This document shows, piece by piece, positions 15,849 to 39,930 of a stretch of DNA of 64,000 bases. This stretch comes from Podarcis filfolensis (lineage: Eukaryota): NCBI GenBank assembly GCA_964270895.1, contig OZ185442.1; one strand, given 5' to 3'. The position numbers were made by a program, and so were the translations under genes. The notes beneath the pieces were generated by a model. That model saw only the letters and a program-made list of their open reading frames with translations, was not told where the DNA came from and ran no database searches. Position 1 is the first letter of the stretch. Each line of letters starts with the position of its first letter.

Positions 15849-16179
15849 AGTGTTGGCATTCAAATTGCTATGCACTGAAATAAATTATATTAATACTAAG
15901 CATTGTGGTGACTCTCCTCTTTTGCATAGAGAATATCCAGTTGCATTAGTTCCATATGCCTTGCTGCTTGGTGCTTCTCAATAACTTATTTGAAATCCCA
16001 CTTACTGCGTGGATAAGGCCTTTCTCTCTTGCATATTTTCTCCAGCTGTGCCATTTCTCTCTCCCTCTTTCTGTGTGGTTTGGTTTTGGGGCGGGGTGGT
16101 GGTGGAACCCTACACCTCTCCTTCGCTCACAGATGGGGCCTTTCTACAGTGTCACTGCTGGTTTGCATAAAGAAGAGGG

Positions 16180-16300
16180 AGGCGTGTGGCTACGTATGGG
16201 GTTGGCTGACACCCAATGAGGTTTTTAATGCACACTTCACCTCAAATAAGGAAACACAAAGAGGGCCGTAACACAGGGAGGCTGGCCGGGTGACATCACT
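16180..16300 (+). promoter_or_regulatory. Putative promoter of the 16475 exon
   Basis: GC-box-like GGAGGCGTGTGG, a CCAAT near 16214 and a CRE/AP-1-like TGACATCA at 16291-16298, in a locally CpG-enriched stretch just upstream of the candidate first exon. Confidence 0.3.
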
Positions 16301-16474
16301 GCTCAAAGAGTGACCAAAGTGCAGTTCTTGTCTGGTGGCTGGTTAACTTGGAGCAGGACGGGAGGCTGGCTCGGACCGCCAGAGTGACTCTGTGGATCTG
16401 TGCATTAATTCTGCACCCCTTTGGGACATGGTCACGGCGTCTTCCAGCTGAAAGGAGGGCAATCCAGCGGGCAG

Positions 16475-16526
16475 ATGAACACTGAGAAATACAGGAAGTT
16501 CCTGGATGGACTCAACAACCTGAAAG
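16475..16526 (+). CDS. MACF1: Probable MACF1 alternative first coding exon, plectin-1e-like: MNTEKYRKFLDGLNNLK|(D)
   Basis: 17 codons +1 nt with an upstream in-frame TAA at 16406-16408 and an AAG|GTACAG donor. The phase-1 join gives [11 protein letters not shown], as in plectin 1e (MDPSRAIQNEISSLK-D, recalled). Confidence 0.7.
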
Positions 16527-19500
16527 GTACAGATGCAAGCTCCTTTATTTCTCTCCCGTTGGAGTGTGTGTAGAAAGGAGCAAGGTAGCTGAGCCAGCTC
16601 TGTCGCCAGGCTCAGGAGGGAGCAGAGCCCGTTCTCAGGTGGGCACAGGTGCCTGGGATAGGAAGGAATAAGCTCCCAAAGGCTGGCGACGGACAACAGT
16701 TTTGCAGCCAGTTGACGGTGGTTTGTCAGGCACTTCACTTGACTGGAGAGGGGGGCAGCTGTGCACAAGCGTTCCTTTTGTTCCACGGCTGCCTCTGGTC
16801 AAACAGGCTTTGCATGTTTTTAGGACTCAGTGAAAACTGCAAATCCTTTTGGCCAGTGGTGCAAATGGGATGTGTGTCTGTATCATGAGCAGCAGCAGCA
16901 CCAGTGATTTCCTCTTCAACCTGCCTTCAGCTCTCTGAAGAGCCATTGTCTCCAGCTGGAGACTGGCTTTGTGGGCAGTCAGGCTGGAAGGGAAGCGACT
17001 GTTCTCCTTCCCATTAATCTCTGTCCGCCTCAGGTCGGCTGTTCTGTTGGTGGGGCGGGGGATCGACCCCTGTCCTGCTTTGTTCTTCAAGAGGTAGCTG
17101 GTCCAGCCTTTGTCCTGGCGGTCCCACCTTGTTTCCGGTACCCATTTCTCCCAAGGTGTCTCAGTGATGCATGAGTCAGAGTTTAAACATGAACCTCTTT
17201 CCTGCAATAGCTGAAGGCAATGGCTTTATAGGGACAGGAAAGGATCTAGAAAGCATTTGCTCTTTTACATAAGAAAAACAACTCTCTTTTTTCTTAAAAA
17301 AATGTTGCATTATTGCCATTCCTTGGAGTCCAGAGAGGGCTTTGCTAAATAACAACCTGAGAACTTTGCTTTGCTTCTTCCTGCCCTCTGAATCTACCAT
17401 CCTTGCTAGGTTCTGATTTGCAGAGAAGTTTCCAAGCATTTTCGCTCTGTGTGGTTTTTTTTTGGGGGGGGGATATGGATGGACAGACACGTAAAGCTCT
17501 TGTATGAACCAGGATTGTAGACCGGAGGGAGCAGATGGTGCTATGTGATCCTTTTGTAGCAGGATCATGATGGATGGAGACACTCCTTGATGCTCCAGCC
17601 AAGCTCTCACTTCCCAGCTCCATTTTTTTCCACCTCTTTCCCCCCACCCCACCCCCAGAGGTTGGGAGAGGGGATAAATGTGTCGATGGACATTTGATCA
17701 AGCTCTCTGTGGCCTCTTGAAGCAGGTGCTGGATGGTGGAGAGGGGGGCGCTTGCACAAATGTTCAGTCTGCGCATGCGGTGTGTGGCTAGTGAGATACT
17801 TGGGCATATGCTGAATGGCGGCTTGGCTCAATATGCCTTACAGATATTTTTGCAGCAGGGCAGTCTGTGCCATGCTGGAGATGTTCAGAGCCTTCTCTGT
17901 CAGTTTGAAAAGGCAGAATGATGCAGGAGAATTTGCTGTGCCCAAATGCTAAATGGTCATACTTGAAATACTGCTCCGACATACTTGAAATGGTCATACT
18001 TGAAATACTGCTTATGGCAGGGGGTTCGACTGGCTTATTTGTAGCAGGAAAGGATTTTGGTGGATTCCTAAGACTGATGCTTGTTTTCACCAGGTTATGT
18101 CCAGCCACCCTTTTGGGAAGGTTGCCTTCCCCTTGGACCCACAGCCACATATTTCCCGTGCCCAGTTGTCTGCAAGCCCCTCTGAGCAGCAAAGAGAGAG
18201 GGACAGGAGTAGCTGCAGTGGGAAAGGGTAGAAGCTGATTCTAGGAAAGAGCCATAGCTTGGTGGCATCCCACCAATGTTGCATGCAGATGGTCCTGGGT
18301 TCAGTCCCCACAATTTCCTCCTAAGTCTGAGAAATAGTCCTCTCTTGAGCCCCTAAGCAGCCGCTGAGAGTTGATGTTGTGTCCGACCATCACTTTGAAA
18401 CTCCCTGCCCATTGACACTAGGCAGCCAGTCTTTGTGGTTAAAACATTTTTGGTTAGGCGAGCCTATCCAGACATGTCAATGTCAATATGCTTTAATCTT
18501 TTTTTAAAAAAAACTGTTGTTACTAATGTTTTAAATTGTTTTAAACTGTTTTATTGGTAGTTTTAATATTTGGCATAAAACGCTCAGAGATTTTGCTGCA
18601 ATCAGTTGGTGTCTGAGCTTCCCCAAATGAATAAATAAATCCACCCTGAGCTTTTGGTGGACTTAGAGTCAGATTCCTGGGTGTTGCAGCTTCCTGTGTC
18701 CCTATGGGCAAGGACTTAGAGGGGAATGGGCAGGCAGCTGGGCTCAATGGCTCAAACTTCCTCTGTGTTGGCAAGCAAAGAAGTCTGCTCATCGACTCTT
18801 TCACTGGCTTGAACTGCAGGAGAATATTGTGTCTTGTTGGGGCGTCTCATTAGTCAATGTGTTTTGGCCTAGTTTTCTCTCTCTTTCCTGTTTATTTTCC
18901 TGGCCCCCAGCAGGGCTCCAGAGCTTTCCTGGGGTAGTCCAGTGACCCATTTTGACTTGTCGTGGCCTCTGTTCCTTCTGTTTCCTGTTGGAATAAGGCT
19001 GGTTGGTAATGGCAACTCCAGCGGGGAAGTCTCCCCGAACAAGCCTGTGTTTCAAACACAATCTAAATTTGAAATGGTCGTCCTGGAGCCAGGCTTGTAG
19101 ACAGCTGCTCACCTCATTGCCTCTGTTGATTTAGAAATTGCCTCTAGGTGACCAGGAAGGAGATGTGGAAGACAGTTCTTGTTTACCCTTTTAGGTGACT
19201 GCTGTGCCACAAATGGTTGATATATAGTGTGGGGTGTGGTTTTTTGTGTGGTTTTTTGTGTGGTTTTTTGTTTAAATGGGGCAGTCTTTGACTTGTTTGA
19301 GGCTATAATGGAACCAAAATATGACAGTTTCCTCAAATAAAACAAGTTATTGGAGCTGAGGAAATCAGGAATTGCCTTAAATGGGGACACAGGGGCTAGA
19401 AACAGCTTGGAATCTGCTATTTATTATGATGACTAGTAATAGTAAGTAGTGGCACCAGCAGCAGGAGCTGACGTTTTCTCAGGCTTAAAAGCATTGTTTG

Positions 19501-20023
19501 GGAGAAAGGCACTCCTTTCTCCTTTTGACTATTATACTTACGGTAAGCAATGATCTGCCATGACTCAAATGGGATCCCAGAGAGCTTAAATTCAGCCCTG
19601 GCTGTCCATAATTTTTCTCTGGAAGTTCTCTCAGCTGATCATGATGTTTTGTGTTGCAAAGGTGAGCTGTGTGTTTAGTTTAGCTCAATGCCAAAGGGGC
19701 TGCCCTCTGCCTGTTTTCACATTCCCACCTGGCTCGCTGTCACTTTCATGTTGCCAGACTTAGAAGAGAGGCCTGTGACCTCCTATTCCTGCATTTGCCA
19801 TACAAGAAGAGTTAATCCAGTTCACTTAAATTGGAAGGACTTTGTGTGCGCAGAAAGAGTGTGTCAGAGAAGAGAAAGTTGGGGCTGTGTCCTTCATAGA
19901 TTTTTTTTCCTGTCTCCAACATTTGCAGCTGGTGTTGGGGAATCAAGTGTAAACCAAACTCCTGCATGGCTCAAGTAGTGAAGCAACTGTTTGGAATCAA
20001 GGGCAAGCCTGGAAACATTCTTT

Positions 20024-20026
<3 letters not shown>

Positions 20027-20071
<45 letters not shown>
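20027..20071. repeat. (AC)n microsatellite
   Basis: Direct reading. Confidence 0.95.
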
Positions 20072-20073
<2 letters not shown>

Positions 20074-23000
20074 TTCATATAACCCTCCCCATTTGGCCAG
20101 CACATCAGCAGCTGTGATAAAGAAGTGAGTTTGGCAACTCATTGCCAACCAGCTGGCCTTTTTGTTTAAAAGTATCTTTTAAAAAATGAAAGGTATTGCA
20201 TACCTGTCTTCTGCCCGGTGCTGGACCTTCTGTTTTTCTCCACTTGGCCCAGCTGACCTTGTGTTCCACTTTTGCTCCTCCTGCATTCAATTCTGCATCT
20301 ATGCTGGTTTAGGGCTAGGCAATTAGCAGGTCGCTGCTGGATTTGTGGAAGAGTCGGCATTTGTTCTCCTGATGCAGTCCCTGCTGTGTTCCTCTCCCCT
20401 GGGCTTGTAGACCCTCTCAGGGAAGCAGAGGAACTCTGGCCCTTGGACTCAAGGAATGCTCAAGGTGCTTTGGCAAAGATTGTGCCCAGTGGGGAGTGAA
20501 AAAGACCTGGATTGCTGTGTGGCTTTTTGACATATTCCTTTGGGACCCTGCTGTCTTGCTAGCCTTCTTCACTTCTTGATTGTTTTGAACCCACTGTGCT
20601 GAAATTATAATTTCATTGTTTTATATTTTATGTAAGATGGTTTGAGGGATTTTTTTTTAAAAAAAACAACAACCAATCAAGCAGTGTACAAATTTCATGA
20701 AATAAACAAATGTTCACATGCCTGCAGTGCTGTTGCTGTCAATGTCACAGCTTCCCCACATTTCTGCAAAAGGCCTTCAAAGAGATTGCAGCCCAGAACT
20801 GTGGTATTTGGTAGCAAAGTTGATTCTGTTGAATTTGGACTCTGGTCACTGGAGCATCAAAGTAACTGACTTCCTTTTAGATGTTTGGTTGTAACTGTTT
20901 TTGCTGTGCTATTGCCAGAGGTGGCTGTCCTTCAAGGACTTCATTAGTTTTCATTTTGTATCTCTTTGGCCTCTGCATGCAGATGGGACAGACCTTGGTG
21001 TTTCATGGCTACCTCACTGCCCTGTTTATCATGTACCCTGACAGGTAACCCTTGGCAGGTAACCCTTCAGTGCGTGTGTCAGAGAGGGGGCTAAGACACA
21101 AATGCTAGTGCCTCAACTAGCCTGTTAGTCTTCTAGACTTGTGTTCAAATCCAACCAACAATTTATTGGGTTGCTCCAGCTACTCTGTGCAACTTCTTCA
21201 CAATGAAATGAAATAAAACCTGGTGCATGAATTCTGAATTCCTGATTTACTTGCAGCTTTCAGGGTGTTGGGCAGCAATCCTACAGGCTGAGTTGGGCAA
21301 TTGGGGATGGATTCTACTTGACACTGGTGCCAAGAATGAAGCAACTGCTGTGCTTAATCAATATGACGCATGGAGCTTAAATCAAGCTCTGCTACAGCCC
21401 CAGAGTTACCTTAGAACTTCAGCTTTTATGTCTGAAACTTAGAACTTAGCTGCAGAACCTCTGAGTGTGTGCAGAATACTTTCTCATCACTTGAGAAACT
21501 ACAGGCAGCCCTGGGTAGACTGGGGCTCATGGCTTCCGGCTTGAATGATGTGCTGGGGCAACCCAGCCAGATGGGCAAGGTAAAATAAAATGGTAAATTT
21601 TGCACTTTTGATGTGGCCTCTTTCTAGCCCCACATGACATACCGAATGCATGGGATGGAGACTGGATCACAACGTTCCACAGATTTGGTACCCCCTGGTG
21701 GGTCACATGAACGGGTCGTGTGTGGGAGGGGGGAGAATGATCCACAGGTGCTGTTTTGATTACTTCTACCGTGATGCCATGATCCCATAAAAGTATTTTG
21801 CTGATATGATTCTTTTTGTACATGAGGCCCTTGCGAAATGTGATACACTTCTTAACTGGGTTGAAGGAAGATATGTCTTAGAATCTAATGTTAGAACTTG
21901 GATACTTAGAATAACCTGTCCTGGGCTTCTTATGAAGGGTGGGATATAAATAAAACTTAACAAAATAAAACACCATCCATCTATCCTGCAGATGCATGGA
22001 ATGGAGAAAACACCTTTGAGCCTGTGTGGAGTGCCCTTTTTGTCACCATGAGGTCTGTTCGGAAAAATCTGCCTATACGTTTCCAAGCCCAGTTCAATGT
22101 TGAGTCAGCTGCAAATCTCTGAAGGAACCCCTTCCCCTCCTCCACTTGCCCAGGCTTTAAGTTTGGTACTAGAGGTTCTTATAGTTGTCCTGCTATCAGG
22201 TGAACAATGCTGTGTGAAAATGTGGGGAAAGACCTTTTTGGTGGTGGCACCCCATCCCTGGAAGGCCCTTCCCTCTTGCGGTGTGTCTAGTTCCCATATT
22301 CCTTGGTTTTTTGGCACTGGCTAAAGATGTCCAGGGTTCTGGGTGGAGTTGTAATAAGGTTTGTTACTGTATTAAAAACCTGCTATAATACATAGCAGCT
22401 ATATCATTATGATAGTGCTTTAGTAATTTTTATCTGATGTGTTGGATTTGTTTCTTTTTGCAACAGTCATTGTTATTTGTTTTATGTTATAACAATCCTA
22501 GGATTGTTAAAACAACGAAGAACGGGTTTATAAATGGAAGGAAATGAAATAAATAATTATCTCAACGTTCATTTCTTTTTTCAGTATAGAGGGTTTTTTT
22601 ATTCTGCCTTTCCGGTGGCTCTGCGTCTTTTAAACTGCCAAAACTGTACTTTAATAATACATTAGGACAAATACGTTGTAATTGGTATACTTCATTTTAG
22701 TTTATGGCGTGGGACTTTCTGTCCTTCTTTCAAAGAGCTGAGGGCAGTGTACATAATTCTGTCTCTGATTCGTACAACGACCCTTTGAGGTAGGTTGGGT
22801 GGAGAGGCAGGAACCTGGCCAATGGTCACCCAGGGAGCTTCATGGCTGCGTGGGGATTTCTGAACCCATGTGTCTCCAGTATTGATTTTTGTCATGTAAG
22901 CCATTATGGGGGCTTTTGGCCAGTTATGTGGGAGCTTGCATTTGAATGAATAACAATAGGAATATTCCCATTTTGATCCATGCTGAGTCAGCAGTGTTCC

Positions 23001-23796
23001 CTCCCCTTCATTCCCCAGAGGGTCCTCACAGAAGCAAAGCCCTCCTGTTAATTGTCTTATTTGTTCCCTTAGGCTGGAAGTCACATTGCTAATGTAGGTC
23101 ACTGAGCTTTCCAGGAGAAATTTCCTGCCTCAAGTTTTGATGGGCAGCAGCCATGACGGTCACTGCTCTTGAACAGACACACACATGCACACACCCTGTG
23201 CAAAGTGCCCAGTGGCTTCCTGCTTAGCTCACGTGGAGGGAGAAGCTCTTTTGACCAAGATTTTATTATGGCATTGTCTCCCCAGATGTGGGTTTCACCT
23301 TCTCCCCAGCTGGCTTGTTGTTTTCCAGCAGGCAAAGTTCCAGTAGCCAAGGTTTCTAGACCACCTTTCTTCCCCATGTGCCTGGGCCATTGTCCAGGAA
23401 ACCTTTGGACCCTTAAAATGCTTCTGGCTAAACCTTCCTACAAAAGATGGCTTCCTTCAGTCTATCCACCCTAAGGAAGTCTCAGAAAACAACTGCCCTC
23501 TACTATTGAAGGTTCATTCATGAACCCCATTCAGGTGGCAAAGGTGTGTCTCTGGGGGATGAAGAGAGGGAGAAGCCCTGCTTCATAGCTCTGAAGCTTT
23601 GTTCTCCATTAAGGAGCAGCAGCCCCTTGGCATTTTCTTACCTGACCTTCTGTGTGTGAGTTTCAGGGGTGGGGATTGGCCAGTGTTAATGACACCAGCC
23701 TTTGCCAACCAGGTGCCCTCTGGATGCTACTGGACTACAACTCCCATCATCCCCTGTTGGCAGGGGCAGATGGCAGTGGAAGTCCCACAACATCTG

Positions 23797-24151
23797 GCCC
23801 AATTGCCTTCTAAATCCGGCCCGTGGACGGTCCGTGAACCAGCGTGTTTTTATATGAGTAGAATGTGTCCTTTTATTTAAAATGCCTCTCTGGGTTATTC
23901 GTGGGGCCTGCCTGGTGTTTTTACATGAGTAAAACGTGTCCTTTTATTTAAAATGCATCTCTGGGTTTTTGTGGGGCCTGCCTGGTATTTTTACATGAGT
24001 AGAATGTGTGCTTTTCTTTAAAATGCATCTCTGGGTTATTTGTGGAGCATAGGAATTCGTTCATTATTTTTTTCCAAAATATAGTCTGGCCCCCCACAAG
24101 GTTTGAGGGATAGTGGACTAGCCCCCTGCTGAAAAAGTTTGCTGATCCCTG
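23797..24151. mobile_element. hAT non-autonomous element with one intact TIR and an internal 70-71 bp tandem repeat
   Basis: Right end AAAAGTTTGCTGATCCCTG; about 2.9 repeat units at 23844-24045; left TIR not visible. Confidence 0.75.
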
Positions 24152-24954
24152 GTCTTGAGTGTTTTATACCATGGGTTATATTGTTTTACGGTGTGTTTTC
24201 TCCTTTAGTTAACTTCTAGGTGCGTTCTCTGTCCTCAAAAGCGCTTTTTAGAAATGGCCTTTGCTTCCTTGAGTTTCTATGGGGTGCCTGCTTCTGCCTT
24301 GAGGCTGCAGCTGTGTGTCATAATTGGACATGTAACCAGTAGCTTTCCACTGGAGTCTCTCTGGAGTGTGAGCCAGATGTTCATGCAGTAAAGTGGGTTA
24401 AGTGCCAGAAATTGGGCTGAAGCAGAAGCAGCGTGCCCCCTCCCTGCCTTTTTGCTGTTTTGGGGTCACCATTCTGAATGCAGTATCATTGACTGGTGAT
24501 GAAAACACCATCTGCCCCATGCCATATGTCCCCGTGCCTGTTTCCCTAAAGATACACTCAAAACCCAGTCTCCTGACCCAAGACGATGCTAATGTCTGCC
24601 CAAGGTGGATAACTGTGTCTTCGGATGGGATTTATCTGGTCCTCCGACTCTTTAGTGGCTGTGTATTTACTGAATGTGGGCGTTCCCTGAAATCATACCT
24701 GCTAGGGAGTGTCCATGTTGCTTGGACTGATTTGGCTAGCAAAACAGGGCTGGGTTCTTTCAGGCTCTGAATGTAAGAACATTGTTTGAGATCTTGTCCT
24801 TGCCGCTTGCCCAAGACCTTCACCACCCTTCAGCTTCCCTGAAATAGGTGGTTAAAGTGTTTTCCCAGGGTATCTGTTTCAAGTTACTTATTTATTGCAA
24901 TTTATATTCTACCTTTTTCTCTGAAGAACTCAAGGTGTGGTGTATGTGGTTCTC

Positions 24955-25086
24955 CTCAATACAACAACTCTACGAGGTAGGTTAGCCTGAGAGATAGTGA
25001 CTGGCCCCCAAGGTCACCCAGGGAGCTTCATGGCCGAGTGGGGATTTGAACCCTGGTCTCCCAGGTCCTAGTCCGAGACTCTAACC
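24955..25086 (-). mobile_element. MIR/CORE-like SINE interrupted by the hAT element at 25087
   Basis: CAACAACTCTACGAGGTAGG...AAGGTCACCCAGGGAGCTTCATGGCCGAGTGGGGATTTGAACCC...CTCTAACC. Confidence 0.75.
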
Positions 25087-25483
25087 CAGGGGTCGGCAAC
25101 GTTTTTTTGAGGCCGGTCTGATCCACTCCCCGGCAGACCTCTTGGTGGGCCGGAGTGTGCGCGCCTATGCACTCAAGCTATTTCCGGCGCTCTTCCAGGT
25201 TGGAACAGCGCCGAAAATAATGTGTGCGTATGCGCATGGGCGCTCCTCCGTTCCGGAAGTGTGCTGGAAATTGTGTGTGCGCATGCGTATGTACGCTCAG
25301 GTGTGCACACACTATTTCCGGCGCTCTTCTGACCCGGAAGTCGGTCCCCGCAGCAAGAAAAAACATGGCGCCGCAGGGGGAAAAGCACGGAATCCCCATG
25401 TCGATCCACGGAACGGCTGTGGCCTGGTTCCAGGAAGCTCATGGGCCAGAACTGGCCCATGGGCCTTAGGTTGCCAACCTTTG
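25087..25483. mobile_element. hAT (Charlie-like) non-autonomous element, CpG-rich
   Basis: TIRs CAGGGGTCGGCAAC / GTTGCCAACCTTTG. Perfect 8-bp TSD CTCTAACC at 25079-25086 and 25484-25491. Confidence 0.92.
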
Positions 25484-25754
25484 CTCTAACCATTGGGTGC
25501 AACCAAACTCAAACCTCTTGTGCTACAGGGAAGGGGAGAAAGGGGTGAGAAAGTCTGTTCTGAGAATGTCCGCCATAGACAGCCTTAGACGGCTGACTTT
25601 TCTGCCAAGGCTTGAGAGCGATCACCAGTTCTCAGGAGTTAGAGGTGCTCTAATGAAGGCATTGTTCCTTCTGGCCTTACTTCTTAACTCTCTCCCCACC
25701 CCCTTGGTGTCCTGCCTGGGTGAACAGGTCTTGCAGGTTTTTGGAGTACAACCG

Positions 25755-26163
25755 AAACCTGCAATGAGGAACGGCTAAGGGAGCTGGGCATGTTTAGCCT
25801 TTAGAAGAGGAGGTTAAGGGGTGTTATGATAGCCATGTTCAAATATATAAAAGGATGTCACATAGAGGAGGGAGAAAGGTTGTTTTCTGCTGCTCCAGAG
25901 AAGCGGACACAGAGCAATGGATCCAAACTACAAGAAAGAAGATTCCACCTAAACATTAGGAAGAACTTCCTGACAGTAAGAGCTGTTCGACAGTGGAATT
26001 TGCTGCCAAGGAGTGTGGTGGAGTCTCCTTCTTTGAAGGTCTTTAAGCAGAGGCTTGACAACCATATGTCAGGAGTGCTCTGATGGTGTTTCCTGCTTGG
26101 CAGGGGGTTGGACTCGATGGCCCTTGTGGTCTCTTCCAACTCTATGATTCTATGATTCTATGA
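25755..26163 (+). mobile_element. CR1 LINE, 5'-truncated 3' end
   Basis: Encodes MFKYIKGCHIEEGERLFSAAPEKRTQSNGSKLQERRFHLNIRKNFLTVRAVRQWN; ends in an (ATTCTATG)n tail. Confidence 0.95.
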
Positions 26164-26682
26164 CCAGAGACTACAGAGGTGTGCCAGGAAAGAGGAAGAA
26201 TTCATGTTCCATGAGCTGCAGAAACAGTCTTGTCTAAGCAAAGCTGCATGTTGTGCTAACCTTGTGCCTAAAAAGTCTGCTTAAAACCAGCCACTCTCTG
26301 TCAGCAAAAGCTCTGTGTGCCCCACAAATTCCAGATCATGACCAGGAGGAGAGCATGACTCTCTTCCCTGCCCCCCATTCTCAGTGCCATTTTCCTGCTG
26401 GAAATCACCTCTGAAGGTGTTATTTGCAGCAAACTGCTTTCAAATGACGTGGTTAAAGACAGGAGCTAGGAGGAATTGGCTGCTTGAATCCTGGCCCCGG
26501 GGGCGCCATCAGGCGGCATCTGGGGGTAGGCAGGGCTCAAGATGCCACCTCCAGTCCCCCACTTCCAGTGTTTATTTTCCGTATTTTTGCTTTTTTGCCC
26601 AGTCATGTGTTAATTTCCTTGAATTGGAAGCAGTTGGGGCCGCTCAAGGTGTCTGTATATGATAAGACAGCCTGAGCTATGA

Positions 26683-26738
<56 letters not shown>
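26683..26738. repeat. Compound (CT)n(GT)n microsatellite
   Basis: Direct reading. Confidence 0.95.
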
Positions 26739-26740
<2 letters not shown>

Positions 26741-27239
26741 GTGCCTTGAGGCTTTTCTACCCCCACCCCTGGGGCAAGGGGCACGATCCTTTGCAGATCC
26801 CAGTGCTGCCTTGCGGAGATGGGTGGGAAACTGCAAGGGTCAGGGTGGGTGGGTGTAGTCCTAAGTATTTCTTGATGGCCTGTGGTTGAAGTTTCGTCTT
26901 TCCTTCCTCACTCCAAAATGAAAGTTGGAGGCTTTTTAAAGGCTCCTGGGGGCACAAAGGCCACCTGAGAGCAGATGGAGCCTGGGGACTTCCTGCCAGA
27001 GCAAGCTGGTAAAATTCCTATTTTGAGCTTGCTTGGTGGTTTTAGCCAAGCCCCTTTCCCTCTCAGGCTCGGCTCCCCACACACTTTTGCTGCAGCCTGG
27101 GGTTACCAGCACTGGCCTACCTTGTAGGGCTGTTTTATAAGGATGGTTGGGAGAGCATGGGTGTAAGGCGCGCGCGCGTGTGTGTGTGTGTATAACTTTA
27201 TTTTAAAATTGCCTACAGAAACAATGCAAAGAATTGTAC

Positions 27240-27450
27240 TCATTAGCAGGTTTTGAGTAAACATTTACATGGAAAGGAAATAATCAGGATTTGATACTGT
27301 GTTAAAATAAACTAGAAAAGGAGGTTAAGGGAAGTCTGAGGGGAGGGAGGGGAGGGACTATTTGGGATTAGTGAATTATGATATATGTTATAATGTAATT
27401 TTGAGGCGGAAATGAAAAATGTAATAAAAATTATTACAAAAAAAAACCAC
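27240..27450 (+). mobile_element. Probable L1-like 3' end with polyA
   Basis: G-rich GGGGAGGGAGGGG stretch, then AATAAA and an A-rich tail. An opposite-strand L2-like tail follows at about 27460-27520. Confidence 0.4.
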
Positions 27451-28730
27451 ACAAAAAAGTTTATTTTAAAATTCTATCCCACTTTTCCTCTAAAAGGGAG
27501 CCACGGTGGACAAACAACCAAGAGTCAAATCAATGCAATAAATAAAAAAAATTTGAAATGTTTGAAAATGTTAAGAACATCTCAAAATATTGTTAAACAG
27601 CCACGTATCCTCGCAGGTAATAATTTCAAGGTTGCACGGAACAGGTATCATTCAGCCATCAAATGTGTGGATGAACACGAATAAAGTGGCAGACACTCAC
27701 CTCACCAGGGAGAGATTTCCACAAGCGGGGAGACACCACCAAGAATGCCCTGCTGTGTGTCAGTAGCAGCACCAACAAGACGTTTATAAAACTGTCCCCA
27801 TACCTACTTTTTGAACCAGGGTGGCTAGGGGGTCACACTCTGGCTCCTGGGCTCCTGTTCCACCAGAGCTTTATTGCTACTTTGGGCTGGGCAGACTGTG
27901 CTCCAGGCTTCCTGATCATCCTACTCAGCAGACCTGAAGGGCCATTTGCCTCCCACCAAGTCCTAGAAAGCTCCAGCCTCAAGGTTTGCTTTTGGCTAGT
28001 ATGAGCAATTTACCCATGCTTGGCAGGAATTCACTAGGTGCACAGCCTTCTTGGCTGTGGTGTCAGTTTTTGAAATCCCCTCGCCTGGCTTCACATGGCC
28101 AGAACTGCATTTGCTGGGCTGCATGAACAAGCTCCTTGTAATGTTTGGTGGCCTCTTTGTGCTTAAATCAGCCTTCTTCCCCAACCTGGTGCTCTCCAAC
28201 TGCCTTGAATTATATGGCCATACGATGCTGGGGCTAAAGGGAGCAGGTCCATGTAATCTGGGGCTAAGGAGAGCTGTAGTCCAAAGCTGCTGGAGGGCAC
28301 CAGCTTGGGGAAGCTAGCCTGGACCCAAACTAAGCAAAGACATGCTAGCATTTGCATGATCTAATTTGGTTTCTAATGGGCAAATAGGTTTTAAGACAGG
28401 AGAGCAACCCCCCAGAGAACAGAATACTGATCCTTCTTTGCGTTTTGATGATCGCAAATTCCTGATTGCTGACTTGTGACTTTCAAGGTTGCATTGAGGG
28501 GAATAGGGAATAGAGTGGGGAGACTCTAGTGTAACAAGTGGGGGGCAAAATGCCCCTTTAAAAGTTTCCATGAAATGAGCTGAGTTTCTGCTTCCGGTGA
28601 ATGTGCTTGATTAGGAGGGATGCAAGGTGAGGGGGATTTCCACATGAGCCGGGAGATGAATGGTGGAGGTTTCTGTTTGCATAAACACGCTTTCTGTTTG
28701 CATCCAAAAATCTCTCCCTCCCTCCCCCCT

Positions 28731-28775
28731 ACATACACACACGCACGCACGCACGCACGCGCACACACACACACA
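28731..28775. repeat. Compound (AC)n/(GCAC)n repeat
   Basis: Direct reading. Confidence 0.9.
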
Positions 28776-31700
28776 CGGAATCCATGCAGCGACACAGGCG
28801 GAAGCAATGGTGCTGCTGCAGCTGGATCTGTCTAGCAAAACCAAATGAGAATTCGTTCAGCTGTTCAAATTAGAACTTGGCCAGACACGCGCAGGGTTTT
28901 CATGCTCCACATCTTCCGCGCCAGTCGCTAAAACAGCAAGGAGAATCTCTCTGACAAACCGATTTATTTTATCGCAGCAGGAGGCCTTCAAGGACTACTG
29001 CCCAGGTTCTCAAATGTGAGCTTTTTGTCATGCCAAGTTGCCTTCCTTCTTATTTCAAGGGTCCTCCCATTGTCTCACCATGGCAAGGCCTCTTTTGAGA
29101 GAGGATTGCAGCCTAACAACCCTCAATTTCAGTGCCTCGCCCTCCGCTGGGGAAGTGTGGAGCCTGGCGCTTTAAGCCTGCCGGCCCACCCGTGAGGCCT
29201 GAATGATTGGGGCAGTTAACCTGCAAAGTTGTCACAATGCAGACTGTAGCCATTGTGCGCATGGTGTGTGCATTATTATCTACCATTGACTCAATTGCGC
29301 TGACTAACTCGGCAGTGTAATGCAAATCCAAATAATTGTAAGCCGCCCAGGGTGGCTGGGGAAACCCAGCCAGATGGGTGGGGTATAAATAATAAAATTA
29401 TTATTTATTTCTTATCTGCAGTTGGCCTAGCTACTTGCTCTTCCCTCACATTCCCACAGTGGATTCATTAACAGGATTTGCAAGACTCGAGCCTGTTTGG
29501 GATCCTTCTCCATACAATGTTTGCTTTGGAAGCAAGATCTGTACACTGAGAAGGCCGCCTCCTGCTTCTCTTCCTTACATGATTGCAATCTCTGAGGTCT
29601 ACCAAGAATGACCTCTTGAGTTTACCTTTTCTCAGCATGGCATGTAGAAAGATGATTGCAGGGGAAAAAACCCTGGTGGGGTTTTTTATTTCCTCGGATT
29701 TCTGCAAATTCCTGGAGGGTCAGGGTATCCATGGGTACTAGCCAGGGTGGCTACATTCTGCCGCTGCTGCCAGAGGTACTATGCCCTTGTATACCAGTAG
29801 CTGGGAATTGCGGGGGGGGGGGAGGGGGGCAGAGTGCTGTTCCCTTGGGTCCTCCTTATGGGAGTTGTAGTCCAAAACACCTGGAGGGGCACGTGTCGGC
29901 TGGAAAGGCTGGAGTGCATCAGAGCTGCTCTAGCCACTGTCTCAGAGCAGCTGCTGGACCAGAACAGCATGCATCCACAGGCCCCTCGGAGTGATTTTTG
30001 ACTCACTTGTGTGGTGTTTGTGTTTGTGTTGGAAGTGGGTGGCCTGCCTGCGTGGAAGATGTTACAAAAATACACTCGGAAAAGGCCCAGCATACCAGAA
30101 AAAGACGCAGTGTGGATGGTTCCCACAAGCCTAACATTTTCATATTTCCCATCTCTGCCAAGTAGCCTCTGGGTTTGGTGTTAGAATAACAGGCTTGTTT
30201 GTGAAGACACCGCAGCTTTTGTTCAACTGGCAAAAAGGGCCTTTTTCACTCCCTCATTCAAGGCTGCTTTCTCTCTCTCCCCCCACTCCTCTATTTTTCT
30301 TCTTCTTTCCTGTTTCCTAAGCTGCTGTGGGAAGGTTGGAGAGCGTTTGAAGGGGATTCCTTGAAAGCACCCGGACGCTTGAGAAGAGGGGAATTGAGGG
30401 GGCTCAGTGAAGCAGAAGGATTTATGGGTTCATAAGGTCCCATGCACACCCGAGGCTGCCCCCATACTTCCAATAAAAATCCAGTCCACATGCAGGGGCC
30501 ACATGCAGGGGCTATCCCACCTGTATCAGGGGAAAACAGCAAACGGCCTCCAGAGTCACTGTCCAGTTTGTCCAGGTCTTCAGATGGACACTGAGCCTGC
30601 AGTGAGACACTTCTGTGTTTCACAGAAGTGTACCGGCATATTCGCATAAACATGGGTTGTTGTAGAGCATGGCTGGGCTGCTGACCTTGTGGAGAGGGCT
30701 ACATTTCTTATGGGGTTTCAGCTGCAGGTGGGGCCGGATGCAAAGATGGGTGGCTTTTTCTTGCTTTCTGCCACCTGCATGAGATTAGGCTGGGGGATGG
30801 AGGCTACCAACCCCACCCTCCAGGAGGGTGTGCAGCTGGTGGCCATCTCATGTTTGCCCTCAGCATCTGGGTATTCACAGCTATACTGCCCCTGTCTGTG
30901 GAGGTTCCATTTTATCTGACATCACTAATAGGCAGGGCTTTTTTTCAACTGGAACTCAGTTCTTGCACCTCTTAGGTGGGCACCATTGCCATTATAAGAG
31001 AGCAAGGGAGGTGTTCATAGTGAGTTCCAGAACCTCTTTTTCTAGAAAAACAGCACTGCTAATAGGCAGTTATATCTCTCTCCCTCTCCGTATATCAATC
31101 ACAACCCCTTTTTGATGAAGCTACAGCTGGTCCCTTGGCCTAGTTGTTGTCAGTGAGGATGGTGACCTGGGGCGCTTTCTTGCAGGCGTGTGGCTGTATA
31201 TTAGGGTGGCTTTGCATTGCCTTAAAAGTCCATGGTTGCTTTTTAAGCAAGTTCAAGGGTGGGGAGAAGCTGCTGTATGCAAGCAGCACTGCAGCTGCTC
31301 AATTTGTCCTGCTTTTGGCAATGCTGTGTGCCCACACGGAGCCAAGGGACCCATTCTCCTGGGTCAGGCCCCCCTTTTCCAGCTTATCCTCCTTTTGCCC
31401 TGGTCTCCCAGGTGAGGCAGCATCTCTCCCCCCCCCCCCCCCCCGGTCCTCAGTTGGTTGTGCCTTCATGGGAGGCGCTCCTTCCTTTTCACATAAATCT
31501 AGAAGGGCCTCTGGCCTGCCATCATGTCTGGTGCCCTCCCCCTGGGGAACCCCCACATGCTGGCAGCTTCCAGGGCTCTGCTATAAACAGCGATTAGTTG
31601 CTTGGGGTTCGAGGCCTCTGAGAACTTCACAAAAGGTCTGGCCTCGCTGCCTTTTTTCTCAGGACTTAATTAATTCTCTGTCAGTCTGCACGTCTCTTTT

Positions 31701-32269
31701 CTTTTTGAATTCTCACCCCCCCCCCAATTTTCTTGTTTGCTTTTTCTGCTTCCAAAGTTCCTTTTCTGTGGCGGTGCTGCGGATGGGTGGGGGCGTCTTT
31801 CTGCATCCAAAACATCTCCACCCCCCCTCCTTGCATGCACACCTTTTGCGAGCCGCCCACGTCTGCTCCTTGCCGCCTGCTTCCGAAGTTTCCTCTTTCT
31901 CTGTTGGCCAACACAGAGGTCTTCATTCCTGTCTGCCTCCATGACTCCCTTGTTTCTCTGCTCTGTTACCAAAACTGCCCTCCTCTTCTCCATTCATTGT
32001 GTCTTAGTTTCCACTATCAACCTCCCCACCCCACTTTTTAAATGTTCAGGGTGATTTTCAAAAACTGTTTGTACAGTGCCGTCAATGTACTTTTTAGAGT
32101 AGCATGAGTTAAGAAAGGGGGGAAAGGGTATCTGCCTGCAAGGAGCTTGCAGTGCTGGGGGGGAAAGAGGGGACAGGAGAGCCTCTGGGGAGCAGGATTT
32201 TCTCTTGTCAGTCTTGAACCACCAATATCATTTGAGTGACTCACACATGAAAGATCGAGCAAAATGACA

Positions 32270-32476
32270 GGAAAGGAGAATCCTACTGAACATTAGGCAG
32301 ACGGTAAGAGCTGTTCAACAGTGGATGGACTTCCTCAGAAGGTGGTGGACTTTCCTCCACTGAAGGTTTTTAAACTGGTTGGATGCCCATCTTTCAGTGA
32401 TTCCTGCATTGCAGCGGGTTGGACTAGATGACCATTTGGGGGTCCCTTCCAATTCTGCAATTCTGTGATTCTATGA
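32270..32476 (+). mobile_element. Degenerate CR1 LINE 3' fragment
   Basis: GTAAGAGCTGTTCAACAGTGG...GGTTGGACTAGATGACC...ATTCTGTGATTCTATG. Confidence 0.85.
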
Positions 32477-33432
32477 ACCGGAGTTTTGGTCCATGTGAAT
32501 CAATCCTAGAGGCCCCATCTTCAGTGCAGAGGGGAGCTGGCTGCCAGCTGTGTTGCTGATGTGCAGGGCAGTTGCACAAAAGCAGTGAGTGCGCACGTGG
32601 GCACTTGTCAGGCATCTGCTGGAGCTTCACGGCTGGCACATTTTTGGAATGCCATTTCAGCAGCAGCTCCCCTCGGGCACTCTGGAAGCCGTGGAGGCAG
32701 AGGAGCTGTAGGGTGTGGGGATCTGCCTGGGCTGGCAGGAGCAGAGTAGTGATACATTCATGTTTACATCAGTGCTCCTTCTCTCTGCCCTTGTCTTACC
32801 ATGCTTCTGTAGAGAGAGGAGCTGCCAATGGAGGCTTCGTGCTGGAACTGAAGAGAAGCCTTCTTCCTTGAGGGCCTTGAAGAAAAACCCTTCATAAACA
32901 CAAAAGCAGAAATGTGCTCTGTTTGCAATGAAGCACAAGCGCCAAGCTTCTTCCTGGCATTTTTTTAAGGGGTGGGGATGTTGGCATTGCCACTGTGCAA
33001 ACTGCAGGATGCTGTGAAATTGGGGCAGGACAATGGATTTTTGTTGTTGGGGTCAGGACCGATGTGATTGGTCAGTTAAGTATTTCTATTGTTTTACCTG
33101 ATCTAGGAGGGGCAGATGCCACTCGCAGCCCACCCACCCCCGGCTAGGCCCATGAGCAGGACTCTCTACCCAACGTGGCTTTAGTAAAAGTTGCCTCAAT
33201 GTTGGTCCCAAAAAGAGAGAGAGAGCTACCTTCAGACTTCCTGTAGTAGGTAGGGCTCTCTGTTGGCAATTCTGAGGAAGAAAACCTGAAATGAAGAAGA
33301 ATGCATTTCCAAATGCTATTCCTGAAGTGTCTGGCTTGAACTGTGGACTTCATACATGCATGGGCTACCAGGCAAGCCTCCGTGGGGAAGAGAGCGATTT
33401 GTAATTAGTATGTTACTATTAAGTAAAGACAA

Positions 33433-33497
33433 ATTTAGAATTGTGGAGTTGGGACCACAAGGTTCATCTAGTCCAACCCCTTGCAATGCAGGAATCT
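33433..33497 (-). mobile_element. CR1 3' tail fragment
   Basis: Reverse complement of the CR1 end (TAGAATTGTGGAGTTGG...CATCTAGTCCAACCCC). Confidence 0.7.
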
Positions 33498-34200
33498 TTC
33501 ACTCAGCATGGGGTTTGGGGTTTGAACCCATGTCCCTAAAGTTAAGAGTCTCATGCTCTACTGATGTCTCACAGGCTTAGTCAGTTTGGCAGATACAATC
33601 ACAGGATAGCTCTGCCAGGCGGGATCCCAAGAGCCACTTCATCGCTAGACAGGTTTATAATCGCTAGACAAGTTTATAGTAAGGAAACCATGTGTGTCTC
33701 CCCCAAAGCGTGATATGCTGACAAAGTGGAAATTCAGTGGAAATACATTATTATTTATTTAGAGCATTTGTACCCTGCTCTTCATCCAAAAAGGCTCCCA
33801 AGGTGAATTACATACAATTTAAAAAAGACATTTCCCTATCAGAGGCTTGCCATAAAAATAAAAAAAATGACATGCAAAGAAAAAGGGACAGAGAGGGAAG
33901 AGGAAAATAAAAAAACTTGGGCACCACTTTCTACACAGCTGTTCCTATATTGACCAGTTGGCACAGTTCAGGGGCAAGAGGTGCCTGATGGAACTGGCCC
34001 TCCAGCAAAGCTGATGAAATGAGCCTTTTTGCTTCTTGTCTCCCCATTCTGCCCCCCCCCCCCACCAGTCTTATGGAATGACTGCCCCCAGGATGACAGT
34101 GAAGAGGAAGGAGGAAGAGGCTGGTGGGGCTGGCCTGTCACAGCAGAACTGGTGGAGTGAGCCCTGCTCCTGAGCTCTCTCTCACATACTACAGTGTATA

Positions 34201-34415
34201 CAATGGTACCTCGGGTTACAGACACTTCAGGTTACAGACTCTGCTAACCCAGAAATAGTACCTCAGGTTAAGAACTTTGCTTCAGGATGAGAACAGAAAT
34301 CGTGTGGCAGCAGCGGGAGGCCCCATTAGCTAAAGTGGTGCTTCAGGTTAAGAACAGTTTCAGGTTAAGAACGGACCTCCAGAACGAATTAAGTTCTTAA
34401 CCAGAGGTACCACTG
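34201..34415. mobile_element. Tigger-like MITE, same subfamily as 8968-9209, opposite orientation
   Basis: TA|CAATGGTACCTC ... GAGGTACCACTG|TA; the interior is the reverse complement of the 8968 copy. Confidence 0.92.
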
Positions 34416-35749
34416 TACTGTCTTACTGTGTGAAGAAACCCTCATAATAAATTGTCTTGTATGACGTGGCCCTAAAATGCTATCCCCCACACACACCCCC
34501 ACCAAGTTTACTAGTTACTTCATTCTTCAAGGGACAGGCCTCGGTTTCTTTCTCCCGCCTTTGCCCTGGCAAAGGTCCATTTCTCATTAATCCTTATGTA
34601 TAGTGTGGATGTGGAATTTCCTCTTGGAAGAAAGCAGCTCTGTTTCTGAGATCTTCGGCAAATCCTTCGAGCTCTTTGTGTTCTCTCCACCATCAGCTCC
34701 CCCCCCTCGACGCTTCAGTGATGTTGTCTTTGTGGTGTGGGAGTGGGGGGTGGACGTGTTGGTGCCACACAGCATTATTGGGATGTAGCAAAAGGTGTGT
34801 TGCTTCAGATTCCGCAAACTGGAACCGTATTGTCCTGTCAGATACCTGGCTTCAGATTGTGTATAATAGAGAGGGAAAGCTCTGATCCCTAATTGTGGTT
34901 CTCCCTTGCAGGCCTGATTCCTACTAGCTGATGAGTTTTCCTGCACTGTCAGGGTTGGAACCTCCAGTGAAAAAAGATGGGCGTAAACAAAGGCTGCATA
35001 ATGAAGTCGGTCAGGCCTTGGGGAGATTAAGAGGCTGCCGGCGCAAGCGGTGCCTCCAGCTTTGCCAATTTTTCCACTCTGAGCTTTTCAGTTTGGCCAG
35101 GCTGTGGTGAGCGTGAGAAAAAGGCTTCTGTGAGCATTGCCAAAAATCATGAGAGGAGCACAATCCACCATACTGCGCCTGGAAGTCCCTGCGGGCCTTT
35201 GACAGCCAGCCGTTGTCCTGGAGATCCAAGGACTATCTTTGACTGGCTTCCTTTGTATGCCTGGGGATCTGCAGCCAAGGGTTTAACCTGGAGCCTCTTT
35301 CTTTCCCCTCTCAGGAGAATGCTAAAAACTTCCTCAAGGTGCTGGTGTTGCCACAACTGCATTGGGCTGTTTACTTTTGGGGGGTGGGTTGGGAAGCAAA
35401 GAGGCCTCCTGTTTGTGCCTCAATCACAGCTGAGCCCTCTTATCTCTTCCTGCACCAGCAGAACCTGCCTTTCCTTTTCTTTTCAGCTGGACAAGGTGAA
35501 CCAGGGCACCTTCTCTGCCCGTCGACACCTGTTCATTCCCTACTCTCTCTTTTTTCATCATTCCAGTGCTCAGGCAAAGGGAGCTTAGATTTTTGGTGCT
35601 TCTGTGGCACACGCTTCACACAGATGTCTCTGAAAGGCATGTGGTATGAGAGATGTCCCAAGAGGCAGCAACCTAGATGGGGGCCCAAGGCCAGGGACTA
35701 CAACAAGGCCACAAGATCTCTTTCTTTTGCAGCCAAGTATGAGCTGCTG

Positions 35750-36101
35750 GGATGCGGGTGGCACCGTGGGTTAAACCACAGAGCCTAGGACTTGCCGATC
35801 GGAAGGTCGGCGGTTCGAATCCCCACCACGGGGTGAGCTCCCATTGCTCGGTCCCTGCTCCTGCCAACCTAGCAGTTCGAAAGCACGTCAAAGTGCAAGT
35901 AGATAAATAGGTACTGCTCCAGCAGGAAGGGAAACGGCGTTTCCGTGCGCTGCTCTGGTTCGCCAGAAGTGGCTTAGTGATGCTGGCCACATGACCTGGA
36001 AGCTGGACACCGGCTCCCTCGGCCAGTAAAGCGAGATGAGCACCGCAACCCCAGAGTCGGTCACGACTGGACCTAATGGTCAGGAGTCTTTTTACCTTTA
36101 C
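35750..36101 (+). mobile_element. Sauria SINE, full length
   Basis: A box TGGCACCGTGG, B box GGTTCGAATCC, TTTACCTTTAC tail. TSD TATGAGCT(G/T)CTG at 35738-35749 and 36102-36113. Confidence 0.93.
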
Positions 36102-39100: not shown

Positions 39101-39888
39101 CTGGAAATAACACAAATTCAGCCACAAGCATTGGCCAGAAAGGTAGGCCATTTGTACAAATTTCATGGAAGGAACTGCAGAGCGTGAAGGCAGGGAAGGA
39201 ATGGGGAGCAGTGATCACAGCCTTAACAGAAAGCAAAACCAACGGTATCCTGTGGCATCTTATTGTGGCCTACACTGAGATGGACTGAAGTCCATGTGAT
39301 TTTGCTGCAAGGGACTAGCACGGTGACCCCATGGAAATTGCCAGAAAGTGTCATTCTTGATCTTAACCAACTGCTAGAGCAGAGGATGATGCTGAGAGCC
39401 ACTCCATTCAGTATCCAGAGTGAGCCACAGACTTTTCTGTTGAAGCTGAACATGATGGAGGCTCTAAAATAGCCTGTGCCATGCTCTTTCTAATGCCTGT
39501 GGTGAGTGCCCTGAAGTGGAAAGCATTTAGAAAAGTCATCTGTGGTGTAAAGCTGGGGGTGGGCAACTTTAGGCCCAGGGACCAAATACAGCCGTCTGGG
39601 CCTCTCTATGGACTCAGCTACACATTATAAATGTGACACCAGGTCATGCTGTAGAGTGGATTCCAAAGTCAATGGCACATTGCCTTGGAAGCTCCCCCCC
39701 CCCCAATAGCATTTATTTTTCGATAGCGTTTTTTATATCTGTAAAGATCCCGCCTAAATCAACCTCAAAACTCTCCTCAGGCCACACTTCCCACTGGCCT
39801 TGCGTAGAGTGTTTTGGTCTGCCTTGAGTGTGTCCTTGAACTACAATAAATGTGTCATGCTTGCTTTGATGAGGATAGAGGTGTGTGG

Positions 39889-39930
<42 letters not shown>
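39889..39930. repeat. (GT)n microsatellite
   Basis: Direct reading. Confidence 0.95.

What the first reader, a model, noticed from the sequence alone, without database searches (positions are those of the whole stretch)
16475..16526. Plectin-1e-like 17-codon first exon 45 kb upstream of the common exon
MNTEKYRKFLDGLNNLK is below the ORF-track cutoff. It has an in-frame upstream stop, promoter-like motifs just upstream, and an AAG|GTACAG donor. It aligns at its C-terminal end to plectin 1e (recalled MDPSRAIQNEISSLK) as R-x-[FI]-x-[DN]-x-[LI]-[NS]-[NS]-L-K|D. It reads as an amphipathic helix. The implied intron is 16527-61735 (45,209 nt).
Basis: partly seen in the sequence, partly recalled or inferred. 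Interest (0 to 1): 0.7.

Follow-up and report, generated by a model that had tools for sequence, protein, structure and literature searches.

The report
Conserved short alternative MACF1 first exon
The 17-codon stretch is a real, very old alternative start exon of the lizard's cytoskeletal linker gene MACF1, already in automatic gene models of a python, a seal and a cichlid fish; no paper I could search describes it, and its likeness to plectin is not specific to exon 1e.

Summary
ATG at 16475, 17 codons (MNTEKYRKFLDGLNNLK), in-frame TAA at 16406, and donor AAAG|GTACAG after 16526. The donor is in phase with the acceptor at 61736, giving K|DERDRVQKK, the first CH1 exon of MACF1.

ORF plus donor alone is not above chance: 190 combinations in the window are as good or better. 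Homology decides it. A python RefSeq model (XP_025028503.1) starts with the same 17 residues, spliced to the same exon. A grey seal MACF1-like model (MNAYKYQKFLEGLNNLR|DERD) and a cichlid model (MSATAAYRQFLQDLEEKR|DERD) carry the same head. In an unspliced ORF from another assembly, identity stops exactly at the donor.

So it is a conserved alternative first coding exon, at least as old as bony vertebrates.

Use in this lizard was not shown. Two raw RNA runs gave no reads, which is no test, and two small runs gave only unspliced contigs.

The "plectin 1e" label is not specifically supported. The head scores higher against plectin 1a tails than against the recalled 1e peptide, and no genuine 1e sequence could be retrieved.

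Function is inferred only: a helix-prone head in front of the actin-binding domain, with a conserved 1-5-8 hydrophobic spacing.

The scan noted this stretch before, and sibling heads at 52.0 and 57.0 kb of this window.

The parts
16475..16526 (+). Coding part of the alternative first exon: ATG, 17 codons (MNTEKYRKFLDGLNNLK) and the first base (G) of the Asp codon completed in exon 2.
   Evidence: It is 17/17 identical to the start of python XP_025028503.1 (P0001) and 12/17 identical to the grey seal and Logan mammal head.
16527..16532 (+). Splice donor GTACAG (AAAG|GTACAG), phase 1.
   Evidence: The simple consensus score is 6 of 9. In the unspliced ORF P0087, identity with the lizard ends right after K17-G, that is at this donor.
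16406..16408 (+). In-frame upstream stop (TAA), which makes 16475 the first in-frame ATG.
16142..16474 (+). Presumed 5' untranslated part or proximal promoter; extent unknown. It holds ATAAA-like (16166), CCAAT (16213) and CRE-like (16291) motifs, and a 7-codon upstream ORF at 16428-16451.
   Evidence: Contigs of runs X1 and X2 are colinear with the genome over 16142-16568 and absent from 15800-16141. The library type is unknown, so this is only a hint.
16527..61735 (+). Implied intron of 45,209 nt. It contains two further conserved MACF1 first exons (52019-52117 and 56965-57027).
61736..61798 (+). Common exon 2, the start of the CH1 domain: (G)AT GAA ... = [21 protein letters not shown], with acceptor ttaacag| and donor |GTAAGC.
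   Evidence: It is 21/21 identical to the first residues of the MACF1 actin-binding domain 4z6g. CH domain PF00307 is found in P0001.

Best explanation
The stretch 16475-16526 is the coding part of a genuine, deeply conserved alternative first exon of MACF1. Transcription that starts upstream of it, at a site not yet mapped, gives an mRNA in which 16526 is joined to 61736. The resulting MACF1 isoform has its actin-binding domain preceded by a 17-residue head, MNTEKYRKFLDGLNNLK.

Shown: the exon's frame, donor and phase. Shown: its conservation from teleost to squamate to mammal, with identity ending at the donor. Shown: the same junction in gene models and spliced contigs of other species.

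Inferred: as in plectin and dystonin, the head does not change the domain set. It would tune where the isoform goes or what binds next to the CH1 domain. The invariant residues Y6, F9, L10 and L13 lie on a helix-prone segment that would continue helix A of CH1. Y6-L10-L13 have the 1-5-8 spacing that lets the plectin 1a tail dock the N-lobe of Ca2+-calmodulin. A calcium- or EF-hand-dependent switch on the actin-binding domain is therefore the most concrete mechanism to test.

The head belongs to the class of short plakin heads ending in a basic residue before DERD (plectin 1a, 1e and 1f types). Which plectin exon is its true paralogue is unresolved.
For: -: the unspliced ORF of the window finds P0001, the only candidate in 5.8 billion clusters.
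- P0001 is XP_025028503.1 of Python bivittatus. It reads MNTEKYRKFLDGLNNLK|[21 protein letters not shown]|VRKHVNDLY..., identical to the window over both exons.
- grey seal XP_035974893.1 (MACF1-like isoform X2) and an unlabelled spliced Logan contig (P0002) carry MNAYKYQKFLEGLNNLR|DERD. P0087 has the identical 17 residues, followed by unrelated sequence after the donor.
- cichlid XP_042069130.1 and Logan P0004 carry MSATAAYRQFLQDLEEKR|DERD on a macf1-type exon 3.
- tblastn of these heads hits the window only at 16475-16525 (E 6e-9 to 8e-5).
- fish against lizard scores 26 over 12 residues. The best family-average score among 890 chance peptides of the window is 9.
- the only two differences inside the ORF in diverged contigs of the same species label are synonymous (P about 0.04).
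- the exon 2 and 3 part is closest to the MACF1 structure 4z6g.
- AlphaFold2 puts residues 3-40 in one helix with pLDDT 84-91.
- PMC4353693: the plectin 1a tail folds into a helix that extends CH1 helix A when Ca2+-calmodulin binds L25-V29-A32.
Against: - No RNA evidence from this lizard. Raw RNA runs X19 and X20 gave 0 reads on 15800-17299. That is no test, because the organism's presence in the part read was not shown.
- The X1 and X2 contigs run unspliced through the donor.
- There is no CpG island, the Kozak context is weak, and upstream ATGs are present.
- The transcription start is unknown, so upstream non-coding exons cannot be excluded.
- The python, seal and cichlid proteins are automatic models.
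- The structural support is weak. Model 1 is a truncated domain drawn as one long helix, and model 2 failed (pLDDT 44).
- The hydrophobic moment is not significant.
- The 1-5-8 register sits one residue closer to DERD than in plectin 1a, and position -13, which is Leu in plectin 1a, is Lys or Ala here.
Confidence: 0.88

Rival explanations
1. It is specifically the MACF1 counterpart (ohnologue) of plectin exon 1e. It would be part of a first-exon array colinear with PLEC.
For: The length is similar (17 against 15 codons) and the K|DERD junction is the same. The C-terminally anchored score of the recalled 1e peptide against the head family is 5.7, against a shuffled mean of -7.3 (p about 0.02). 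Only 5 of 890 chance peptides of the window score as high.
Against: The 1e peptide is recalled, not retrieved. No tool or paper returned a genuine 1e sequence. Verified plectin 1a tails score higher (7-16; the fish plectin P0007 is the best of 108 database heads), and 1f-type tails score alike. Nine of 108 database heads score at least as high as the recalled 1e. The order of exons in PLEC could not be checked.
Confidence: 0.2
2. It is a conserved coding exon but not a true first exon. Transcription would start at a distant upstream promoter, and one or more non-coding exons would be spliced onto it, as for plectin 1c.
For: No start site was mapped. There is no CpG island and no strong core promoter. 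The seal model extends 46 codons upstream in frame.
Against: The sequence before the ATG (...tccagcgggcag|ATG) has no pyrimidine tract typical of an acceptor. The X1 and X2 contigs are colinear with the genome from 16142 to 16568, with no joint or loose end.
Confidence: 0.15
3. It is a chance ATG-ORF next to a chance GT, with no function.
For: 190 equally good or better ORF-donor combinations lie in the same 61.7 kb. No RNA reads were found.
Against: There is 17/17 residue identity with a snake, 12/17 with mammals, and a recognisable teleost orthologue, all annotated as spliced to the CH1 exon. Identity stops at the donor in P0087.
Confidence: 0.02
4. It is a relic: ancestral and still used in other lineages, but silent in this lizard.
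For: There were zero reads in two raw RNA runs carrying the same species label.
Against: ATG, frame and donor are intact, and the protein is identical to python's. The two intraspecific differences are synonymous. The zero-read result is no test, because the organism and MACF1 coverage were not verified.
Confidence: 0.04

Closest known systems
Alternative first exons of plectin (1, 1a-1g), which give short isoform-specific heads before the common exon 2 (review PMC8468861)
   Same: A short ATG-bearing exon with a phase-1 donor joins the same homologous exon ([19 protein letters not shown]...). Several such exons lie in one long 5' region. The head sits directly in front of the actin-binding domain.
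   Different: The gene is MACF1, not PLEC. No function, antibody or knockout exists for this head. Reviews of MACF1 list only the a1, a2, a3, -4, b and c isoforms, and three mouse start sites (PMC4914211, PMC8012552).
Plectin 1a tail, the Ca2+-calmodulin N-lobe docking site (PDB 4Q57; PMC4353693)
   Same: It is the best-scoring verified plectin head against this family: Y-x-x-hydrophobic-L ... basic|DERD. Both are helix-prone segments abutting helix A of CH1, with a 1-5-8 hydrophobic spacing (Y6-L10-L13 here, L25-V29-A32 in plectin 1a).
   Different: Plectin 1a is 37 residues with a 22-residue targeting part; this head has 17. The motif register is shifted by one residue. Calmodulin binding is untested. 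Paralogy is not proven with so few residues.
Plectin 1e head
   Same: The length is similar, it ends in L-K|DERD, and the hydrophobic spacing is similar.
   Different: Only three identities. The sequence could not be verified with any tool. It is no closer than the 1a or 1f types.
1f-type heads (plectin 1f, dystonin-a1, MACF1 ...AYEDVLERYK; arthropod ...YEENLTKFK)
   Same: A short acidic/basic helical head ending in K|DERD, with register-specific similarity (mean 3-6 against shuffled -5 to -6).
   Different: MACF1 has its own separate 1f-type exon (seal P0005, cod-like P0092), so this is a distinct head. No 1f-type match lies in the window.

Membership tests
Alternative first coding exon of MACF1 | An ATG with an in-frame upstream stop, an open frame to a GT donor, and a phase compatible with the common exon 2. 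| tested here: met
   ATG 16475, TAA 16406, G|GT at 16526/16527, and G+AT = Asp at 61736.
Alternative first coding exon of MACF1 | The downstream exon belongs to MACF1. | tested here: met
   Exon 61736-61798 is 21/21 identical to the start of MACF1 structure 4z6g. P0001 scores 98.6 bits against MACF1 and 91 against plectin.
Alternative first coding exon of MACF1 | The spliced product exists in transcripts or gene models. | tested here: met
   This holds in other species only: python XP_025028503.1, grey seal XP_035974893.1, cichlid XP_042069130.1, and the spliced Logan contigs P0002 and P0004. It was not shown in this lizard.
Alternative first coding exon of MACF1 | Conservation is confined to the exon. 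| tested here: met
   P0087 has identical 17 residues and then unrelated sequence from the donor on. Two of two intraspecific differences are synonymous.
Alternative first coding exon of MACF1 | Its own transcription start just upstream. | tested here: inconclusive
   No reads in the raw RNA runs. Contigs of unknown library type begin at 16142 and 16206. Motifs are at chance frequency.
Paralogue of plectin exon 1e | Sequence similarity to 1e greater than to other plakin heads. | tested here: not met
   The recalled 1e scores 5.7. Verified 1a tails score 7-16 and 1f types 3-10. The 1e peptide is unverified.
Paralogue of plectin exon 1e | The same relative position in the first-exon array of PLEC. 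| not testable with these tools
Plectin-1a-type calmodulin-docking tail | A 1-5-8 hydrophobic motif in the ten residues before CH1 helix A. | tested here: inconclusive
   Y6-L10-L13 (fish Y7-L11-L14) are invariant and spaced 1-5-8. The register is one residue nearer to DERD than L25-V29-A32.
Plectin-1a-type calmodulin-docking tail | The tail forms a helix continuous with CH1 helix A. | tested here: inconclusive
   The AlphaFold2 model of P0001 has a helix over 3-64 with pLDDT 84-91 over the first 40 residues, but the domain is truncated. The second model is unusable.
Plectin-1a-type calmodulin-docking tail | Ca2+-dependent calmodulin binding. | not testable with these tools
   This needs a binding assay.

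The most novel reading that the evidence does not exclude
This head gives one MACF1 isoform a calcium switch like that of plectin 1a. Ca2+-calmodulin, or an EF-hand partner such as MACF1's own C-terminal EF hands, would dock on the conserved Y-x3-L-x2-L helix directly before CH1. That would displace actin or another partner of the actin-binding domain. The 430-million-year conservation of 17 residues would then reflect this interface.
Probability: 0.12. Interest if true: 0.55.

Novelty: already known. Interest (0 to 1): 0.3.

Why it matters
In plectin and dystonin, short N-terminal heads decide where the protein goes and what binds beside the actin-binding domain. The MACF1 literature counts only three N-terminal variants. 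This head, together with the 1b-type and 1g-type heads in the same window, shows that MACF1 keeps a plectin-like set of ancient heads. Annotation pipelines list them, but no paper found here studies them.

For the lizard genome the result is an ordinary annotation point. For plakin biology it offers a small, well-defined and testable object: 17 residues, four of them invariant hydrophobic positions.

Tried and rejected
- **RNA evidence.** The one run search and the one read-laying run gave no RNA support. Raw RNA runs X19 and X20 had 0 reads. X1 and X2 gave only unspliced contigs of unknown library type.
- The python locus, the P0087 contig and any DNA-level alignment of orthologous loci could therefore not be obtained.
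- **Joined model.** The database protein P0001, which happens to equal it, was used instead.
- **Plectin 1e.** No genuine plectin 1e sequence came from the third protein search (only the best 120 of 804 were listed) or from papers.
- **Big representative search.** It was not run. The protein was not left open and the claim does not rest on absence of relatives.
- **Negative checks.** Rfam gave no hit in the window. Local repeats near the exon show nothing relevant. Pfam finds nothing on the overlapping minus-strand 147-aa ORF or the 79-aa plus-strand ORF. The amphipathicity test was not significant. The second AlphaFold2 run failed.
- **CpG patch.** The CpG-rich patch at 25.0-25.4 kb was considered as a promoter and rejected. 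It is a SINE-like repeat.
- **Human and unlabelled sequences.** P0089 (human plectin fragment) appeared in a hit list and was not used. The organism of the unlabelled Logan proteins P0002, P0004 and P0087 is unknown, and their contigs were not fetched.

Full report
**Observation.** The sequence is as described.
- An ATG at 16475 opens 17 codons, MNTEKYRKFLDGLNNLK.
- The next base, G at 16526, is followed by GTACAG.
- An in-frame TAA lies at 16406-16408.
- At 61735/61736 a good acceptor (ctctttttaacag|AT) opens the exon [21 protein letters not shown], which ends at 61798 before GTAAGC.
- G plus AT makes the Asp codon, so the two exons are in phase and the intron is 45,209 nt.

Exon 2 is 21/21 identical to the first residues of the solved MACF1 actin-binding domain 4z6g. 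Plectin has HLIK there, and dystonin has DERDK..WINQ. The gene is therefore MACF1. Earlier notes of this scan call the genome a wall lizard.

**Is it more than chance on its own?** No. Upstream of 61735 there are 1227 combinations of an ATG-started open frame of 5-60 codons with a phase-1 GT. Of these, 190 have a donor consensus score at least as high as this one, 6 of 9.
- There is no CpG island (o/e 0.32 at 16-17 kb).
- The "promoter-like motifs" are present (ATAAA-like 16166, CCAAT 16213, CRE-like TGACATCA 16291). The first two are common in the window, at 39 and 112 copies; the third occurs 5 times.
- The Kozak context is weak (C at -3, A at +4).
- Four upstream ATGs with short ORFs lie between 16196 and 16451.
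- The hydrophobic moment of the head is not significantly higher than in shuffles.

**Reads.** The single run search listed no run on record as RNA that holds the stretch.

I laid 15800-17299 on two raw RNA runs of the same species label and on two small runs guessed to be RNA. The raw runs were read to about 12 in 100, some 12.8 and 12.6 million reads, and gave no read at all. The tool itself calls this no test, because the organism's presence in the part read was not shown.

The small runs gave contigs at 16206-16568, 16142-16287, 16318-16540 and 16895-17230. These are colinear with the genome and run through the donor, so they show no splicing. Their library type is unknown.

They differ from the window by about 2.5%. 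The only two differences inside the ORF (16483 T>C and 16493 A>C) are both synonymous, with P about 0.04 for two of two. Nothing lies on 15800-16141. That would fit a start near 16.15-16.2 kb if the runs are RNA or open-chromatin data, but this is only a hint.

**Relatives.** I did not build or search the joined model. Instead I searched the unspliced ORF by reference (window:16421-16570). It found one candidate, P0001, 100% identical over the 17 residues.

P0001 is XP_025028503.1, "calmin-like", of Python bivittatus. It reads MNTEKYRKFLDGLNNLK|[21 protein letters not shown]|[30 protein letters not shown]. This is exactly the predicted product, followed by the next MACF1 exon.

Searching the first 40 residues of P0001 gave three more relatives:
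- Grey seal XP_035974893.1, "MACF1-like isoform X2", with ...MNAYKYQKFLEGLNNLR|DERD.
- The same head on an unlabelled, doubly spliced Logan contig (P0002).
- P0087, an unspliced ORF from another assembly. It has the identical 17 residues plus Gly, then sequence unrelated to the lizard intron, so identity stops at the donor.

A third search added cichlid XP_042069130.1 and Logan P0004, with MSATAAYRQFLQDLEEKR|DERD on a macf1-type exon 3. In that cichlid gene, sister isoforms carry the 1g-type and 1b-type heads (P0104, P0162).

The fish head scores 26 against the lizard over 12 residues. The best family-average score among 890 chance peptides of the window is 9. tblastn of all retrieved heads hits the window at 16475-16525, and nowhere else for this family.

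From general knowledge, lacertids and snakes split well over 150 million years ago, and teleosts and tetrapods over 400 million years ago. The exon is therefore ancient and under purifying selection. The chance reading is excluded.

**Which plectin head is it like?** No tool returned a genuine plectin 1e sequence. Text searches for the peptides found nothing, and a search for "plectin 1e" found only one passing mention.

Scores are C-terminally anchored BLOSUM62 sums over 13 residues against the three-member head family:

| Head type | Score | Shuffled mean |
|---|---|---|
| Plectin 1a tails (...NLYLAVLRASEGKK) | mean 8.0, best 16 | -7.6 |
| Vertebrate 1f-type | 3.1 | -5.9 |
| Arthropod 1f-type | 6.2 | -5.0 |
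| Recalled 1e | 5.7 (p about 0.02) | -7.3 |
| 1g, 1c and 1b types | negative | |

- The best 1a-type score belongs to the fish head ...HHYQGMLRAMDERK (P0007). Its sister model carries plectin's exon 2-alpha.
- Orthologues within a class are not independent, so the p-values are generous.
- In the companion 12-residue test, nine of 108 database heads score at least as high as the recalled 1e.

The head belongs to the group of short heads ending in a basic residue before DERD. A specific 1e relationship is not supported over 1a or 1f. Seventeen residues cannot settle it, and the PLEC exon order could not be examined.

**Mechanism.**

Shown: an intact start exon in phase with the CH1 exon. It is conserved across vertebrates and is annotated as spliced that way in three distant species.

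Inferred: an alternative promoter gives a MACF1 isoform that differs only in this head.

By analogy with plectin, heads direct localisation and partner choice (PMC8468861). For plectin 1a, the ten residues before D38 fold into a helix that extends CH1 helix A when the N-lobe of Ca2+-calmodulin binds L25-V29-A32. That binding displaces integrin beta4 and F-actin (PMC4353693).

In this head, Y6, F9, L10 and L13 are invariant from fish to mammal. Y6-L10-L13 have the same 1-5-8 spacing, one residue nearer to DERD.

AlphaFold2 on P0001 draws residues 3-40 as one helix with pLDDT 84-91. The domain is truncated there, however, and a second run on the full cichlid CH1 failed at pLDDT 44. The calmodulin or EF-hand switch is therefore a hypothesis, at about 0.12, and not a finding.

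**Known or new.** Reviews of MACF1 list six isoforms, with three N-terminal variants and three mouse start sites (PMC4914211, PMC8012552). None of the text I could search mentions this head. I could not check whether it equals the published ACF7-1 N-terminus.

It is nevertheless present in RefSeq automatic models of python, grey seal and cichlid. As a sequence feature it is already in public annotation, and as biology it is unstudied. I rate it already known, with modest interest.

**Limits.**
- The big representative search was deliberately not run.
- P0089, a human plectin fragment, appeared in a list and was not used.
- The organisms of the Logan proteins P0002, P0004 and P0087 are unknown, and their contigs were not fetched.

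Noticed in passing
window 52019-52117 (+): A transmembrane-like MACF1 head, MPLLNGTFLPPTVFILSHVLGVAGILYWTKSRR. It is 76% identical to a crocodile fragment (P0098) and 68% to a quail fragment (P0125), both spliced to DERDRVQKK. This is a plectin-1b/dystonin-a2-type first exon.
   Followed up: partly
window 56965-57027 (+): A Cys-Cys-ending head, MWHIFRGERELNAHLVCKMCC. It is 90% identical to tuatara and is recognisable in mammals, teleosts and in dystonin-type fragments. This agrees with the earlier follow-up on the 1g-like exon.
   Followed up: partly
window 24990-25450: This is the only CpG-dense patch of the window (o/e up to 1.1). It reads as a tRNA-like SINE followed by an internally repeated element (...ctatttccggcgctcttc... 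twice). It is not an obvious promoter.
   Followed up: partly
window 16142-16568 and 16895-17230: Very small runs (58-162 million letters, library type not on record) of two studies hold contigs here, at word depth 3-7. They hold none at 15800-16141. This is local enrichment of unknown cause: RNA, open chromatin or capture.
   Followed up: no
window 16343-16786 (-): A 147-aa open frame on the opposite strand overlaps the exon. It has no Pfam match and is probably chance.
   Followed up: partly
proteins P0133, P0139, P0142, P0143, P0145, P0146, P0149-P0155, P0161 (arthropods, a snail): Invertebrate plakin fragments carry heads ...YEENLTKFK|DERDAIQKK and ...LDPADRAVLKIA|DERD. These mirror the vertebrate 1f-type and 1c-type heads, so those two head types predate vertebrates.
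   Followed up: no
proteins P0105, P0106, P0110, P0114, P0125, P0127: Several MACF1 fragments from fish, geckos, a beaver and birds carry an acidic insert of about 35 residues inside CH1, between ...LSGVKL and PREKGRMRF. This points to an optional small exon there.
   Followed up: no
window, whole: The MACF1 1f-type head (...AYEDVLERYK; seal P0005) and 1c-type head (...AERAVVRVA; turtle P0026) have no match in these 64 kb. Those first exons must lie further upstream.
   Followed up: no
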